Shown here: positions 653 to 12,683 of the stretch, one piece after another
Numbering within the stretch: position 1 is the stretch's first letter
Layout of the letters: the number at the start of each line of letters is the position of its first letter
NCBI RefSeq assembly: GCF_031769215.1
Contig: NW_026782002.1
Coordinates: 62,001-126,000 of the forward strand
Source of the DNA: Ylistrum balloti
Lineage: Eukaryota
Reading direction: 5' to 3'
Length of the DNA stretch: 64,000 nt
The notes under the pieces: model-generated
The model's database searches: none
What the model saw: the letters and a program-made list of their open reading frames with translations, nothing else
Told to the model about the DNA's origin: nothing
Made by a program: the position numbers and the translations under genes

Positions 653-3600
653 CATATACCCCAGAGAACTTAGCAGATATGGCTCTTCTATTGTCAGAAT
701 GTGAGGAAGTGTATAGTGCAGAAGTACCAACAGCTATGCAGGTCAGTGGTCCTCAGACAGTCTGCTGACATAAACACTCTGTCAACTGTAACATTTAGAT
801 CAATATTATTAAAAGGACGATTTAATCAAGTTTTATAAAAAATTTTCATGTCAAGAAATCTTTAATGACATTGTAGTTCTATACTCCTTATGAGCTAATC
901 ATGGCCTTTTATTGGCACAATATGATGTTTTCCACACGTTTTTAAGTAAATTGTAAGGAATTCTTAAACAGAAGGGTACTTTGACCTCACAGACATGCAC
1001 AAATCCACTTGAGAGGTCAACAAAAGTGGCTTTCAACCTGAAATGGGAGCTAGTAAAACAAGTCACACCATACAGAGACACAGTAAATGGATGTCAAAAA
1101 TCCTAGGATCACTGTTGTACAAGAATATGAGAGATGGAACATGTATGAAACGTATTTAGGTTAATCATAACCCAGAGAAAGATATGTATTACTGTGTCAT
1201 CACTCTGTTCTTCCATCACATGGATTTGTTTATAATCAACTGTGTTCCCACCAGAGGGTGCATCATTACATACTATATGACAATTTGTGCTATATTTGGC
1301 ATGGACTTTCCCAAAATTTAAACTGACCGCCTGGACATTGACAATATAACCATTACATGATTATTTTGTCTGGATATGTATATTTTCAATTCTACTTGAA
1401 TTTAATAAACGTTGGTTGTTTAAATTGTCCCTTTAAGTTGAGATGGGAGGAAATGGGTCACATTATGGTTTTTTAGGATATCGATATCTTTGAAATTTAT
1501 TTGCTAATAACTTTAAACTTTTAAAGGCAGTTCACTCCTGTTTAAAATCTGTTTCAAGGTTGACTACCACTTTATAAATTATTGGAATAATGACACTTGG
1601 TGAATATGTGTGCATAACAAAATACATGTACTAAAATTCTATATAAACTTTACCAAAATGTTTATACACAACACATACTTAACAAGGTGTTTTAAGATGA
1701 TACAAAGAATTTATAACAGTTTTATCAGTAAACCCAATCCTTGAGTTGATGGTAGTATTTCCTGTTCAAAACCTCAAAGTGTCAGAATATTGGTACTTGT
1801 TGAAGTGTAGCCTCATAATGGTACAAAACTGTATTCTTTTGACCGACAGGAACTTGCCAGAGAAATCAGTGCTGTAGGATTAACAGACGAATTTCTTACC
1901 GTCAGCGATGAAGACTGTGTTCAGTTAATGACGTCCGAAAAGTTCCCAAAACTGAAACAGAAATTTGACACGTTTATTTCACGACACGGTCATCGTTATG
2001 TAAGAGAGGTAAGCTTAAATTATCCAGGACTTTAGTATTTGATCAACAGGTACCTCAGAATGGTTGCTGAAATGTTTCCTGATATAAATGAACTTGACCT
2101 TGAAGAAATTTCCCTAATGCAAAATATACCCTTTCAATATCACAGGAATCACTTATATGTGAAAAACCTTACATTATTTCATAAAGAATTCCTATTGTAT
2201 AAACTAGATAAATATTCCTTTTTTCATGTGAGTGTTTCAGGCTTCATTGAGATTTCATTGATGTTGGTACATGATATAAATATATATATGTTAAAACCTT
2301 GTTATCTGAAATTCATATAACATGAAGACTTCTCGTAATTCAAAGTATGTTGATATACCCGTCTAAACTTCACACCAAACATTTGACAAATGTCGCTTAA
2401 ATTGAATAACCAGATAACTTAAAGTTTTCCTATGGTCCTGCCGACTATGAGCTAATGAGGTTTGAATAGACTGTGAAAAGAAGCAGTTATATTGATAATG
2501 TGATAAAATTAAAACCCAAAAGTATTTTTAGGGTCACTTTTACATAAAGTTGTCACATGGTGTTTATTACAACAATCAGACATCAGAAGTACTATTGTAA
2601 ATGCTCTGTTTTTACTATACAGGCTGAATTCTTTGAGAGATCGTGGCGTGCCAAGCCAGAGAGATTGTCCTGTGTATTGAAGGTAATATTTTCTCAGAAC
2701 TTTAATTTTCACATGTCTGTGTACTGAACTAGTCTTAGACTAGAGAACACTTCATTGGATACTGTTAATGGGATAACTGTGATTAATAGACCTTTGCATT
2801 ATATTACATGTATTTTGAATTGATAAAAACAAATCCTGTTTTTGCATTATTTGAATCTCATTTGATATTCATCATGGCAAATTTAGAAGATTTAATTATT
2901 TATTTGAATGCCTCCCCCAAGATTTGAACCTCAACCCACTGGTTTACTAGCGCTACACTCAACTCAACTGCTAGTGAGAAAAAATCCCTGTAGTTGATCA
3001 GTGTATTGTTACTAGTTTTTACTGGTGTTAAAAATTTGATCAGCAAAATTATTTGTTTGCCTTTGTTGGATATATCATGAGATGGATGTTAAATTATAAA
3101 AATTTCCATTCATGAAAAATGATTGACAAGTTTCTTGCAAGTATGAGATTGTTTTAATGGCATTTCATTGTTTGGAGCATTTTGTGTTACCCTTGTACGT
3201 CATTCTGCTGTCATAACAATTCTGCTCGTTTACTAAGTGAGGGATATAGATATGGAACTGTGATTTAATATGTAGTGGTACATGCAGGTCAAGTTCTGAA
3301 TTGGATGTGGTCAATTTACATTTACCAGAGTTATGACGAGTCAACTTGTAGAATTTTAAATTAAAGATTCACAAAAATAGTAAGACAAATATTGAAGAGC
3401 CTTGCTAACTCCAATGAGAATTTAAAAACAAACAGAAAATTCTGCAGGCAGAATTTTAACTTTTTTTTAGATTCCTTACCATAGATTTTCTAGGCAGGAC
3501 TTAAGTCTTATTTCATGAGTACACCACTTTGCAACGTCAGTAACACTTAAAAAGTTCCACACCTCTCCATGGTATCTACAGGGACATTTGTGTCACTTTT

Positions 3601-12600: not shown

Positions 12601-12683
12601 ATTTGGTGAGGCTGAACGGCAAGACTGGTACGATAGAAAAACTTGTTGATGAGGAAAAGATGGAAATAGAAACGCAGGAATGA
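653..12683 (+). CDS. PEP-utilising mobile (phospho-His swivel) domain protein with rifampicin phosphotransferase/PigC-type architecture (usually auto-annotated 'putative phosphoenolpyruvate synthase'); 5'-partial, 13 exons, ~370 C-terminal aa
   Basis: Exons: 653-741, 1850-2008, 2623-2682, 3714-3814, 4034-4097, 5185-5256, 5802-5893, 6223-6301, 8653-8704, 9068-9147, 9686-9788, 11624-11698, 12598-12683(TGA). All are AG/GT-bounded and phase-consistent. Motifs: [24 protein letters not shown] (RPH/PigC central-domain GxR..E...W...P), [68 protein letters not shown] (catalytic His), [14 protein letters not shown] then stop. The N-terminal ATP-grasp part lies upstream of the window. Confidence 0.92.
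2925..2992 (-). mobile_element. tRNA-derived SINE head relic
   Basis: The minus strand reads ctagcagttgagttgagtgtagcgctagtaaaccagtgggttgaggttcaaatcttggggg, with A-box and B-box-like spacing but no intact cloverleaf. Confidence 0.35.
6740..6970 (+). mobile_element. Highly decayed LINE reverse-transcriptase relic
   Basis: [12 protein letters not shown] (cf. LYACFxDFxKAFD) at ~6774-6812, and GIKQG (cf. GVKQG) at ~6923, interrupted by stops. Confidence 0.3.
9318..9345. repeat. (TTTG)n microsatellite
   Basis: tttgtttgtttgtttgtttgtttgttt. Confidence 0.9.
10535..11335. repeat. 40-bp tandem array, about 20 copies (consensus tgtaaaattgttaatcagtgatagtaaaggtgtgacacta)
   Basis: Directly visible 40-nt period with only two recurrent variant positions (agtgat/agcgat; acta/actt). 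It lies in intron 9789-11623 of the phosphotransferase gene. Confidence 0.97.

What the first reader, a model, noticed from the sequence alone, without database searches (positions are those of the whole stretch)
653..12683. Intron-rich animal gene for an RPH/PigC-architecture phospho-His dikinase with unknown substrate
Seen: 13 phase-consistent exons give an open frame ending in an intact swivel domain ([20 protein letters not shown]), followed about 50 aa later by the stop, with an HGHR..E...W...P central-domain motif upstream. Established: true PEP synthase and PPDK carry a C-terminal PEP/pyruvate TIM barrel after the His domain. ATP-grasp / substrate domain / terminal His domain is instead the layout of rifampicin phosphotransferase (RPH) and the prodigiosin condensing enzyme PigC, which activate small-molecule hydroxyl or carbonyl groups. 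Inference: this is not a glycolytic enzyme but a host small-molecule dikinase, for example for xenobiotic or antibiotic detoxification in a filter feeder, or for pigment or secondary-metabolite condensation. Many short exons argue for long residence in the host genome. Homologues exist in other invertebrates as uncharacterised 'PEP synthase-like' proteins, so the novelty is the function rather than the existence. This is the best candidate for an undescribed system here.
Basis: partly seen in the sequence, partly recalled or inferred. Interest (0 to 1): 0.85.

Follow-up and report, generated by a model that had tools for sequence, protein, structure and literature searches.

The report
Scallop dikinase fused to phospho-lyase
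The window holds the last 13 exons of a scallop gene, named "putative PEP synthase" in GenBank, that really encodes a rifampicin-phosphotransferase-like enzyme fused to a relative of a bacterial phosphosteroid lyase, so it may be an unstudied animal enzyme that removes water from a fatty molecule using ATP.

Summary
Window 653-12683 (+) holds 13 canonical AG/GT exons. Their spliced translation is identical to residues 975-1343 of the public Ylistrum balloti protein "putative phosphoenolpyruvate synthase" (1343 aa). The window holds only the last 27% of the gene. This part carries the central-domain Arg/Lys pair (R1127, K1131), the swivel His (H1290) and the stop 53 residues later.

The full protein has an intact ATP-grasp, an RPH-type central domain, a swivel domain and no PEP/pyruvate barrel. 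Its best solved relative is Listeria rifampin phosphotransferase, but it misses NCBI's cut-offs for RPH, PigC and PEP synthase.

New here: upstream of the window the protein has a membrane anchor and a 320-residue double beta-barrel domain. That domain is homologous to 25-phosphosteroid lyase and keeps its RDxSxGxR motif. In 35 of 80 bacterial loci the same two modules are adjacent genes in the same order.

I infer an ATP-dependent "phosphorylate, then eliminate phosphate" enzyme acting on a lipophilic alcohol. The family spans many animal phyla, and I found no paper on it. The substrate is unknown, and no RNA reads of this species could be tested.

The parts
653..741 (+). Exon 1 of 13 in the window (residues 974-1003 of the 1343-aa protein). 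It starts with 2 nt of a split codon and belongs to the central RPH-type domain.
   Evidence: It has an AG acceptor and a GT donor, and its translation is identical to P0041.
1850..2008 (+). Exon 2 (residues 1004-1056). It ends in ...[10 protein letters not shown], the first half of the HGHR..E...W...P motif.
   Evidence: The exon boundaries were read. The motif aligns with the RPH sequence 'kyGmRcagE'. This exon served as the query.
2623..2682 (+). Exon 3 (residues 1057-1076), [15 protein letters not shown]..., the second half of the motif.
   Evidence: The exon boundaries are, and the alignment to RPH 'idltktrWienPltl' is.
3714..3814 (+). Exon 4 (residues 1077-1110).
   Evidence: It is supported by tblastn with P0041 and by canonical splice sites.
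4034..4097 (+). Exon 5 (residues 1110-1131). It holds R1127 (4083-4085), E1128 and K1131 (4095-4097), the counterparts of RPH R666/K670 in the phosphotransfer site.
   Evidence: The alignment to 5hv1_A is. R, E and K are invariant in 66 homologues (A2 positions R688, E689, K692).
5185..5256 (+). Exon 6 (residues 1132-1155).
   Evidence: It is supported by tblastn with P0041 and by canonical splice sites.
5802..5893 (+). Exon 7 (residues 1156-1186), [18 protein letters not shown]...
6223..6301 (+). Exon 8 (residues 1186-1212).
8653..8704 (+). Exon 9 (residues 1213-1230), a poorly conserved 52-nt linker exon, [17 protein letters not shown].
   Evidence: It was found only with the species' own protein. 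It restores the reading phase and is present in the relative's cDNA-derived protein.
9068..9147 (+). Exon 10 (residues 1230-1256), the start of the swivel domain, GMPVMQGTV...
9686..9788 (+). Exon 11 (residues 1257-1291), the first half of the PEP-utilizers mobile domain. It includes TELGGLLSH, with the phospho-carrier His1290 at 9785-9787.
   Evidence: This exon hits Pfam PF00391 at E 1.5e-07. The His is invariant in 66 homologues.
11624..11698 (+). Exon 12 (residues 1291-1316), the second half of the mobile domain, [16 protein letters not shown]...
   Evidence: This exon hits Pfam PF00391 at E 8e-07, and the boundaries are.
12598..12683 (+). Exon 13 (residues 1316-1343 plus TGA at 12681-12683), the end of the protein. 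No PEP/pyruvate TIM barrel follows.
   Evidence: The exon and its stop codon were read, and Pfam finds no PEP-utilizers_C in the full protein.

Best explanation
The window contains the 3' 27% of a 32.7-kb Ylistrum balloti (scallop) gene. The gene encodes a 1343-aa, membrane-anchored, two-module enzyme.

Module 2 (residues about 440-1343) is a phospho-histidine dikinase of the rifampin-phosphotransferase (RPH) type. The window encodes only its last 370 residues. The expected mechanism is as follows. The ATP-grasp domain splits ATP. His1290 on the swivel domain picks up a phosphoryl group. The domain then swings to the central helical domain, where R1127 and K1131 help pass the phosphoryl group to a hydroxyl of a bulky small molecule, giving AMP + Pi + phospho-substrate.

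Module 1 (residues about 90-415) lies upstream of the window, behind a transmembrane helix at residues 2-21. It is a double beta-barrel homologous to bacterial 25-phosphosteroid lyase. I infer that it removes the phosphate again as a leaving group. The whole protein would then carry out an ATP-driven dehydration (alcohol to alkene), or a related carbocation reaction, on a lipophilic substrate. That substrate is probably an isoprenoid or sterol-like membrane compound.

Shown here: gene structure, domain identities, conserved catalytic residues, the homology of module 1 to the lyase, and the linkage of the two modules in bacteria. Inferred: the reaction order, the lyase activity and the substrate class. 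My confidence is about 0.9 for the RPH-type small-molecule dikinase and about 0.5 for the coupled kinase-lyase reaction.
For: Gene model and identity.

Dikinase module:
- PPDK_N, Rph_4th and PEP-utilizers are present, and no TIM barrel.
- RPH is the best PDB match by sequence (E 5e-97, aligned through R666/K670 and the catalytic His).
- RPH is also the best match by fold, over the whole 904-residue model (pLDDT 87; E 8e-43).
- H1290, R1127, E1128 and K1131 are invariant in 66 homologues.

Lyase-like module:
- The AF2 model has pLDDT 93.5.
- The top Foldseek match is 25-phosphosteroid lyase (E 6e-13), and Z is 22-24 to the whole AttH/kievitone-hydratase/PSL fold group.
- The animal profile A1 matches bacterial ORFs at E 1e-25 to 5e-53, and hhalign A1 vs A4 gives probability 100%, E 1e-46.
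- The bacterial profile A4 hits 25-PSL chain 9fzn_A by sequence at E 9e-27. They share the YEQxG and RD(H/R)SxGxR motifs.
- P0041 keeps H249-Y-E-Q252, R276-D277-H-S279-x-G281-x-R283-x-W285 and E405.
- The product-complex entry 9g4c_A has Asn where that Asp stands. This fits an engineered inactive variant, though I could not check it against a paper.

Linkage of the two modules:
- They are fused in animals.
- In 35 of 80 bacterial loci the lyase-like ORF abuts the dikinase ORF upstream on the same strand. At least 9 further loci have a divergent DUF7064-like gene in the flanks.
- A separate actinobacterial cluster fuses an APH/EcKL kinase to DUF7064.
- The known 25-HSK/25-PSL system is exactly a kinase plus a lyase that dehydrates a tertiary steroid alcohol with ATP (PMC8449060; PMC11061730).

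Membrane anchor: a hydrophobic N-terminus is conserved in orthologues and in stand-alone animal paralogues.
Against: There is no biochemical evidence for any member of this animal or bacterial subfamily, and no paper on them was found.

The kinase in the characterised steroid system is a 40-kDa 'phosphotransferase family' protein, not a dikinase, so the analogy crosses kinase classes.

By structural Z-score the lyase is not closer than AttH, kievitone hydratase or the fungal Diels-Alderases. The domain could therefore be a hydratase, a cyclase or only a lipid-binding module.

The animal profile alone does not reach 25-PSL by sequence; the link needs bacterial intermediates.

The RDxSxGxR Asp is replaced in 24 of 66 fusion-type sequences, mostly lineage-specific extra copies.

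The lyase-like module and the ATP-grasp are not in the window. They rest on the public gene model and on tblastn to the upstream contig.

No RNA run of this species was available; the only run found was DNA.
Confidence: 0.55

Rival explanations
1. The protein is a plain RPH/YvkC-like phosphotransferase. It would inactivate or tag a xenobiotic, antibiotic, flavonoid-like dietary compound or pigment precursor with a stable phosphate. The N-terminal barrel would serve only to anchor the enzyme and to extract or present a hydrophobic substrate from the membrane.
For: Characterised relatives make stable phospho-products: rifampicin-21-phosphate by RPH and flavonoid phosphates by YvkC (PMC13099321). 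The AttH-like fold group includes members filed as lipocalin-like binders (Pfam Lipocalin_9). The bacterial two-gene module has no conserved pathway neighbours, as expected of a self-contained detoxification unit.
Against: The N-domain keeps the RDxSxGxR and YEQxG motifs shared with 25-phosphosteroid lyase, which a passive binder would not need. The protein scores 413 bits against the RPH equivalog cut-off of 999. In the tree it lies outside true RPH. An independent kinase-DUF7064 fusion and the known kinase/lyase pair argue for coupled chemistry.
Confidence: 0.25
2. The modules work in the reverse or a different order. In one version the N-domain acts as a hydratase or cyclase, like CrtC, kievitone hydratase or tocopherol cyclase, and makes a tertiary alcohol that the dikinase then phosphorylates. 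In another version the dikinase activates a carbonyl or enol for a PigC-like condensation.
For: Structural Z-scores to AttH and kievitone hydratase (23.9 and 22.7) equal or slightly exceed those to 25-PSL (22.2). Atlas neighbours include CrtC and Tocopherol_cycl families. NCBI names some orthologues 'PigC-like'. In one bacterial clade the dikinase sits next to an FMO-like monooxygenase (11 loci), so other reaction orders are conceivable.
Against: Sequence-level homology goes to 25-PSL (E 9e-27), with no hit to the hydratases or Diels-Alderases. Identity is also highest to PSL: 15-20% against 7-12%. The PigC and RedH equivalog scores (326 and 300 bits) are far below their cut-offs of 1300 and 1350.
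Confidence: 0.1
3. The gene is a genuine PEP synthase or pyruvate phosphate dikinase of central carbon metabolism, as the public name 'putative phosphoenolpyruvate synthase' says.
For: The ATP-grasp and swivel domains are shared with PEPS, and TIGR01418 gives 328 bits.
Against: There is no PEP/pyruvate TIM barrel. The reading frame stops 53 residues after the catalytic His. TIGR01418 needs 740 bits. The PEPS structure matches only about 390 columns of the ATP-grasp, and PPDK reaches E 1e-7 at best. The central domain is Pfam Rph_4th.
Confidence: 0.02
4. The gene is inactive or not expressed in this species, that is, a decaying copy.
For: No RNA run of this species could be laid on the window.
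Against: All 13 exons in the window are open with canonical splice sites. The catalytic residues are intact. The upstream exons are found in the contig. The orthologue of another scallop is transcribed full-length and is colinear with the model. The run X1 individual shows no frame-breaking variant in exons 8-12: the indels listed all lie in introns.
Confidence: 0.03

Closest known systems
Rifampin phosphotransferase RPH (Listeria monocytogenes, PDB 5FBS/5HV1) and its PRK06241 relatives, including B. subtilis YvkC flavonoid phosphate synthetase
   Same: The domain order is the same: ATP-grasp, helical substrate domain (Pfam Rph_4th) and C-terminal His swivel domain, with no TIM barrel. The catalytic His and the R666/K670 pair are conserved. 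RPH is the best match by sequence and by full-length fold.
   Different: Identity is only about 27%. The protein is below every NCBIfam cut-off (413 bits against 999 for RPH). It sits in a separate clade with bacterial operon-type dikinases. It carries a 440-residue N-terminal extension (transmembrane helix plus PSL-like domain) that RPH lacks. It is an intron-rich gene found across many animal phyla. The substrate is unknown.
25-hydroxysteroid kinase / 25-phosphosteroid lyase of Sterolibacterium denitrificans (ATP-dependent dehydration of a tertiary steroid alcohol; PDB 9FZN, 9G2I, 9G4C)
   Same: The N-terminal domain is homologous to the lyase. The sequence link runs through the bacterial partners at E 9e-27. 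The RDxSxGxR and YEQxG motifs are kept. A kinase is functionally tied to the lyase-like domain, here by fusion or operon.
   Different: The kinase here is a phospho-His dikinase (ATP to AMP + Pi), not a 40-kDa phosphotransferase-family kinase. The two activities are fused in one membrane-anchored animal polypeptide, whereas in Sterolibacterium the genes are unlinked (PMC8449060). The solved lyase entries hold two different chains, A and B. No activity has been shown here.
PEP synthase / pyruvate phosphate dikinase
   Same: The ATP-grasp domain and the phospho-His swivel domain are shared, and so is the three-site swivelling logic.
   Different: The PEP/pyruvate TIM barrel is absent and the domain order differs. 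The model cut-offs are not met.
Prodigiosin ligase PigC / RedH
   Same: The three-domain RPH-like layout is the same, and NCBI names some orthologues 'PigC-like'.
   Different: The scores are 326 and 300 bits against cut-offs of 1300 and 1350. No pigment-cluster context was found.
Rv3169 family / Pfam DUF7065-DUF7064 proteins, including actinobacterial APH(EcKL)-DUF7064 fusions
   Same: The N-domain gives weak hits to DUF7064 and to Rv3169_fam. Atlas clusters with these Pfam families are the nearest folds (TM 0.69-0.84). One cluster is a kinase-DUF7064 fusion.
   Different: The scores are below the family cut-offs (17-19 bits against 24.7; 32 against 150). The animal versions carry an N-terminal membrane anchor. 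These families are themselves uncharacterised, and no paper was found.

Membership tests
RPH-type phospho-His small-molecule dikinase (PRK06241 group) | N-terminal ATP-grasp nucleotide domain (Pfam PPDK_N) | tested here: met
   P0041 residues 453-767 hit PPDK_N at E 2.8e-81. This domain lies upstream of the window, and its exons are present in the contig.
RPH-type phospho-His small-molecule dikinase (PRK06241 group) | Helical central substrate domain of RPH type, with the Arg/Lys pair that assists phosphotransfer (RPH R666/K670) | tested here: met
   Pfam Rph_4th is on record for the product. R1127 and K1131 align to R666 and K670 and are invariant. They are encoded in window exon 5.
RPH-type phospho-His small-molecule dikinase (PRK06241 group) | C-terminal PEP-utilizers swivel domain with the catalytic His, ending the protein (no PEP-utilizers_C barrel) | tested here: met
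   Window exons 11-12 hit PF00391. H1290 is invariant. The stop comes 53 residues later. The full protein has no TIM-barrel family hit.
RPH-type phospho-His small-molecule dikinase (PRK06241 group) | Whole-length fold like solved RPH | tested here: met
   Foldseek gives 5hv1 at E 7.7e-43 over 939 columns with 27% identity. The TM-score is only 0.43-0.53, as expected for mobile domains.
Rifamycin-inactivating phosphotransferase proper (NCBIfam NF041857 / NF000283) | Score above the curated equivalog cut-off | tested here: not met
   The scores are 413 bits against a cut-off of 999, and 301 against 1700. True RPH controls L050 and L076 pass, at 1006 and 1224 bits. In the tree the protein lies outside the RPH clade.
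Rifamycin-inactivating phosphotransferase proper (NCBIfam NF041857 / NF000283) | Phosphorylates the rifamycin C21-OH | not testable with these tools
   This needs an enzyme assay.
PEP synthase / PPDK | PEP/pyruvate-binding TIM barrel (PEP-utilizers_C) and a score above the TIGR01418/TIGR01828 cut-offs | tested here: not met
   There is no such domain. The scores are 328 bits against 740, and 62 against 843.
Prodigiosin ligase PigC/RedH | Score above the NF052631/NF052632 cut-offs | tested here: not met
   The scores are 326 bits against 1300, and 300 against 1350.
25-phosphosteroid-lyase-like domain (AttH-like double barrel; DUF7065/DUF7064; Rv3169 family) | Two-barrel AttH-like fold | tested here: met
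   The model has pLDDT 93.5. Z is 22-24 to AttH, kievitone hydratase, 25-PSL and the Diels-Alderases, and the next unrelated hit has Z 8.5.
25-phosphosteroid-lyase-like domain (AttH-like double barrel; DUF7065/DUF7064; Rv3169 family) | Sequence homology to the solved lyase | tested here: met
   The link is transitive. A1 to the bacterial partners: E down to 5e-53, and hhalign probability 100%. The bacterial profile to 9fzn_A: E 9e-27. The direct search with the animal profile found nothing.
25-phosphosteroid-lyase-like domain (AttH-like double barrel; DUF7065/DUF7064; Rv3169 family) | Conserved RD(H/R)SxGxR and YEQxG motifs | tested here: met
   P0041 has R276-D277-H-S279-F-G281-V-R283 and Y250-E-Q252-W-G254. 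The core residues of both motifs are invariant in the 32 bacterial partners and near-invariant (15-17 of 17) in the stand-alone animal paralogues.
25-phosphosteroid-lyase-like domain (AttH-like double barrel; DUF7065/DUF7064; Rv3169 family) | Pfam/NCBIfam curated cut-offs | tested here: not met
   P0041 scores 17-19 bits on DUF7064 against a cut-off of 24.7, and 32 bits on Rv3169_fam against 150. Orthologues in Haliotis and a shark pass DUF7064, at 29 and 25.5 bits.
25-phosphosteroid-lyase-like domain (AttH-like double barrel; DUF7065/DUF7064; Rv3169 family) | C-O lyase activity on a phospho-ester | not testable with these tools
   This needs an enzyme assay.
Kinase + lyase ATP-dependent dehydratase system (25-HSK/25-PSL type) | Functional coupling of a small-molecule kinase with the lyase | tested here: inconclusive
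   Genetic coupling is strong: fusion in animals, abutting genes in 35 of 80 bacterial loci, and an independent APH-DUF7064 fusion. The kinase is of another class, however, and no reaction was observed.

The most novel reading that the evidence does not exclude
Animals from molluscs to sharks and lamprey, and many bacteria as a two-gene operon, possess an undescribed membrane-bound 'phosphorylate-then-eliminate' enzyme. It would be an ATP-driven dehydratase for tertiary or hindered alcohols of sterols or other isoprenoid lipids. An RPH-type dikinase would supply the phospho-ester, and a domain homologous to 25-phosphosteroid lyase would expel the phosphate. This would be a new reaction in animal lipid metabolism or lipid repair. 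It would also be the first function for the DUF7064/DUF7065 (Rv3169) families, including the stand-alone paralogues in insects.
Probability: 0.3. Interest if true: 0.85.

Novelty: new variant of a known kind. Interest (0 to 1): 0.6.

Why it matters
The gene's GenBank name, "putative PEP synthase", is misleading. The family it belongs to is found in many animal phyla, is about 1330 aa long, and has no studied member.

The fusion of an RPH-like dikinase to a homologue of 25-phosphosteroid lyase recurs as an operon in bacteria. This turns "unknown substrate" into a concrete and cheap experiment: look for ATP-dependent phosphorylation and dehydration of hydroxylated sterols or isoprenoids, using H1290, R1127/K1131 and D277 variants as controls.

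If the hypothesis holds, three things follow. Animals gain a new ATP-dependent lipid reaction. Two Pfam DUFs and the Rv3169 family of mycobacteria gain a function. And kinase-lyase dehydration would prove not to be a curiosity of one anaerobic steroid degrader.

If it fails, the result is still useful: the gene is a typical, correctly spliced member of an annotated family.

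Tried and rejected
(1) Pfam and PDB searches with single exons. Only the two swivel-domain exons hit anything, because the central-domain exons are too short.

(2) The HMMER scan of representatives with exon 2. Its top hit, P0001 (2660 aa), is a repetitive protein that matches by a short repeated word. I rejected it.

(3) A 12-exon model using an alternative acceptor at 9037. It is in frame, but I rejected it. The species' own protein and a relative's cDNA contain the 52-nt exon 8653-8704 and use the acceptor at 9068.

(4) RNA evidence. The only run found (X1) holds introns at about 7x depth, so it is DNA of another individual. It shows no splicing.

(5) The direct profile search of the animal N-domain against PDB sequences found no lyase hit. 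P0225 alone also found nothing. The link was made only through the bacterial operon partners.

(6) The search for a conserved third gene around the bacterial two-gene module. Of 114 neighbouring ORFs, no Pfam family occurred in more than 4.

(7) My first FMO profile was contaminated by one dikinase ORF. Only hits above 800 bits were counted as FMO-like, which gives 11 loci.

(8) The 'ena' proteins of about 1270 aa were suspected to be bacterial. Their locus has one long ORF in 20 kb of otherwise ORF-poor DNA, and they nest among molluscs in the tree. They are probably intronless eukaryotic copies.

(9) Literature searches for the animal family, DUF7064/DUF7065 and 'rifampicin phosphotransferase-like' found nothing relevant. 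One search was wasted by a loose setting.

(10) No PEPS, PPDK or PigC reference sequences were available as tool ids. The tree therefore tests only placement relative to true RPH.

Full report
WHAT IS IN THE WINDOW

The region is AT-rich (GC about 0.32) and has no long ORFs. Stop-free segments with obvious protein sense are flanked by AG and GT.

I read the junctions directly. I then compared them with homologues found by an HMMER scan started from exon 2. This gave 13 exons between 653 and 12683 on the + strand. All have canonical splice sites and consistent phases.

Their translation is 100% identical to residues 975-1343 of P0041, listed by NCBI as "putative phosphoenolpyruvate synthase [Ylistrum balloti]", 1343 aa. 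The window is identical (0 mismatches over 22,683 nt) to contig JAUZWB010001044.1 of assembly GCA_031769215.1, and it begins at base 19,983 of the 32,665-bp gene.

The window therefore holds only the last 27% of the coding sequence. The N-terminal extension, the ATP-grasp and the first half of the central domain lie upstream. Their exons are found in the contig by tblastn.

No RNA of this species could be examined. The single run offered is DNA of another individual. A 4376-nt assembled transcript of a related scallop encodes an orthologue (P0039) that is colinear and gap-free with the 13-exon model, 84% identical over 357 residues. This includes the small linker exon 8653-8704.

THE DIKINASE PART

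Exons 11 and 12 each hit Pfam PEP-utilizers. The full protein has PPDK_N (453-767, E 3e-81), Pfam Rph_4th and PEP-utilizers (1256-1326). It has no PEP-utilizers_C.

Against PDB sequences the best match is Listeria rifampin phosphotransferase (5HV1/5FBS, E 5e-97). The alignment covers the ATP-grasp and, within the window's exons, residues 1027-1330. In that alignment RPH R666 and K670 correspond to R1127 and K1131 (exon 5, codons 4083-4085 and 4095-4097). The catalytic His corresponds to H1290 (exon 11, codon 9785-9787). The numbering follows from the 16-residue tag of 5hv1_A; the role of these residues is from my knowledge of the RPH papers. These residues are invariant in an alignment of 66 homologues.

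An AlphaFold model of residues 440-1343 (pLDDT 87) matches RPH over its whole length (E 8e-43, about 940 columns). PEP synthase matches only the ATP-grasp, and PPDK reaches E 1e-7.

RPH is described as an ATP-grasp, a His-swivel and a substrate domain that phosphorylates the rifampicin C21-OH. Its B. subtilis relative YvkC phosphorylates flavonoids (PMC13099321).

The scallop protein is not an orthologue of any named enzyme. Its NCBIfam scores are 413 bits (cut-off 999) for RPH, 326 (1300) for PigC and 328 (740) for PEP synthase. Bacterial controls from my own loci pass the RPH cut-off.

DISTRIBUTION

A search with the C-terminal third of a Haliotis orthologue gave 2496 hits. The best 120 are proteins of about 1330 aa from these groups:
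- molluscs, annelids and nemerteans;
- echinoderms, hemichordates, amphioxus and a tunicate;
- lamprey, many sharks, rays and a chimaera;
- a priapulid and a horseshoe crab.

They are machine-named "rifampicin phosphotransferase-like", "putative phosphoenolpyruvate synthase", "YvkC-like" or "PigC-like". I found no paper on any of them. The family is old in animals, which agrees with the many short exons.

All full-length orthologues carry about 440 extra N-terminal residues. These begin with a conserved hydrophobic helix (residues 2-21) and a GxYxQPGxWYxLK motif.

A model of residues 1-445 built on 66 sequences is very confident (pLDDT 93.5). It shows two helices followed by a double beta-barrel (99-409).

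Foldseek ranks 25-phosphosteroid lyase first (9FZN/9G2I/9G4C, E 6e-13, 15% identity). AttH, kievitone hydratase and the fungal Diels-Alderases follow. By VIA-align all of these score Z 22-24 and the next unrelated chain scores 8.5. The fold group is certain, but structure alone does not settle the nearest member.

Sequence does settle it. The animal profile alone finds nothing in the PDB. However, a scan of 185,579 bacterial and archaeal genomes with the dikinase alignment returned 80 loci. In 35 of them an ORF of about 340-360 aa matches the animal N-domain profile at E 1e-25 to 5e-53. It lies immediately upstream of the dikinase gene on the same strand, abutting or overlapping it.

A profile of these bacterial partners hits 25-phosphosteroid lyase chain 9fzn_A at E 9e-27, sharing the motifs YEQxG and RD(H/R)SxGxR. 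It aligns to the animal profile with hhalign probability 100%, E 1e-46.

The scallop protein keeps the full motifs: Y250-E-Q252-W-G254, R276-D277-H-S279-F-G281-V-R283-D-W285 and E405. The PDB entry with product and phosphate bound (9g4c_A) has Asn in place of the motif's Asp. I read this as an engineered inactive variant, and hence as a sign that this Asp is catalytic. That is an inference; the structure paper was not in the library.

WHY THE TWO MODULES PROBABLY ACT TOGETHER

1. They are fused in animals in the same order in which they are adjacent genes in Bacteroidota, Chlorobiota, Myxococcota and Bacillota.

2. In a FastTree of 109 dikinase sequences, the animal proteins form one clade (support 100). 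This clade is sister to the bacterial clade that holds all operon-type genes (97). Both lie outside true RPH (100). This is a FastTree only, rooted on RPH, and it has no PEPS or PPDK rows.

3. At least nine of the remaining loci carry a more divergent DUF7065/DUF7064 gene in the flanks. Eleven have an FMO-like monooxygenase next to the dikinase, and in two of these it is fused to an acetoacetate-decarboxylase-like barrel.

4. The ESM Atlas holds an actinobacterial cluster in which an APH/EcKL-type kinase is fused to DUF7064. This is an independent kinase-plus-barrel fusion.

5. The one characterised system of this kind is a kinase plus a lyase. In Sterolibacterium denitrificans a 25-hydroxysteroid kinase makes a high-energy tertiary phospho-ester. 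The lyase then eliminates phosphate to give the delta-24 alkene, a net ATP-dependent dehydration (PMC8449060; PMC11061730).

Other neighbours of the bacterial pair are not conserved: no Pfam family occurs in more than 4 of 114 ORFs. The pair therefore looks self-contained.

MOST LIKELY MECHANISM AND ITS LIMITS

I propose the following. The dikinase phosphorylates a hydroxyl of a lipophilic substrate at the membrane: ATP to AMP + Pi, through phospho-His1290, assisted by R1127/K1131. The N-terminal domain then expels the phosphate to give an alkene or another carbocation-derived product.

The fold group works on prenyl, sterol and polyketide substrates. This, together with the membrane anchor, is why I favour an isoprenoid or sterol-like alcohol.

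None of this chemistry is shown here. Three alternatives remain: a stable phospho-product with the barrel as a mere binding module; a hydratase-first order; or a PigC-like condensation.

The kinase class also differs from the steroid system. And about a third of fusion-type sequences, mostly lineage-specific extra copies, have lost the motif Asp.

NOVELTY

The gene and its family are in public databases under automatic names, so their existence is not new. The dikinase is a new member of the RPH-like group.

What I could not find described is the conserved pairing of this dikinase subfamily with a 25-phosphosteroid-lyase homologue, fused in many animal phyla and adjacent in bacteria. I found no paper on the pairing itself, nor on DUF7064, DUF7065 or the animal family. 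I therefore rate the finding a new variant of a known kind (kinase/lyase ATP-dependent dehydration).

Interest is moderate to high because the hypothesis is directly testable. It is tempered by the absence of any biochemical or expression data for this species, and by the fact that the key new domain lies outside the window.

Noticed in passing
window 10536-11338: There is a tandem array of a 40-bp unit, 20 copies at 96% match. It lies inside the intron between exons 11 and 12.
   Followed up: no
window 9800-10200: A very high-copy dispersed repeat lies in the same intron. Summed contig depth reaches 43,000 in DNA run X1, against about 7 elsewhere. There are many joints and opposite-strand joins, which suggests a MITE- or SINE-like element.
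   Followed up: no
window 36276-37787: A C-rich tandem array with units of 46, 110 and 182 bp explains the local GC of 0.48 and the GC skew of -0.48. Whether it is coding was not checked.
   Followed up: no
window 16428-16938 and 18226-18500: Downstream of the gene there are two short-unit tandem arrays: 25 bp in about 11-20 copies, and 21 bp in 13 perfect copies.
   Followed up: no
window about 18756-21986 (-) and from about 22240 (+); L001 48738-51968 and 52222 onwards: The public annotation places a 354-aa gene with no Pfam hit on the minus strand. After it comes a gene whose product hits the WSLR, WC-rich and WCOB families.
   Followed up: no
proteins P0143-P0224: Stand-alone paralogues of the N-terminal lyase-like domain, about 400-420 aa, occur in many animals: molluscs, hemichordates, lamprey, a brachiopod, a nemertean, shrimp and many insects (mosquitoes, sandflies, moths, beetles). 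They have the same membrane anchor and fully conserved motifs. No insect appeared among the best 120 fusion-type hits. Insects may therefore pair the domain with another kinase, and the EcKL family would be a candidate.
   Followed up: partly
L002 8001-11804 and proteins P0088-P0138 (ENA): About 30 clusters of fusion-type proteins of about 1265-1285 aa lack the N-terminal anchor. At least one (P0096, in L002) is encoded by a single uninterrupted ORF in otherwise ORF-poor DNA. Six sampled members nest among bivalves in the tree. They are possibly intronless retrocopies in an unidentified mollusc-like genome. Many have lost the motif Asp.
   Followed up: partly
L032 4330-5784, L059 4408-5862, L045 4153-5802, L046 4310-5815, L054 2579-4168, L069 6033-7487, L040 512-2764, L071 3548-5800: One bacterial clade of the dikinase (Mycobacterium, Halieaceae, Nocardioides) has no upstream lyase-like gene. 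In it an FMO-like flavin monooxygenase abuts the dikinase gene on the same strand. In L040 the FMO domain is fused to an acetoacetate-decarboxylase-like barrel, and the near-identical 751-aa ORF of L071 probably has the same architecture. This suggests a hydroxylate-then-phosphorylate sequence.
   Followed up: partly
PDB entries 9fzn_A versus 9g4c_A: The two deposited 25-phosphosteroid lyase sequences differ at the Asp of the RDRSWG motif, which is Asn in the product complex. This points to the Asp as a catalytic residue, and the same Asp is D277 in the scallop protein.
   Followed up: partly
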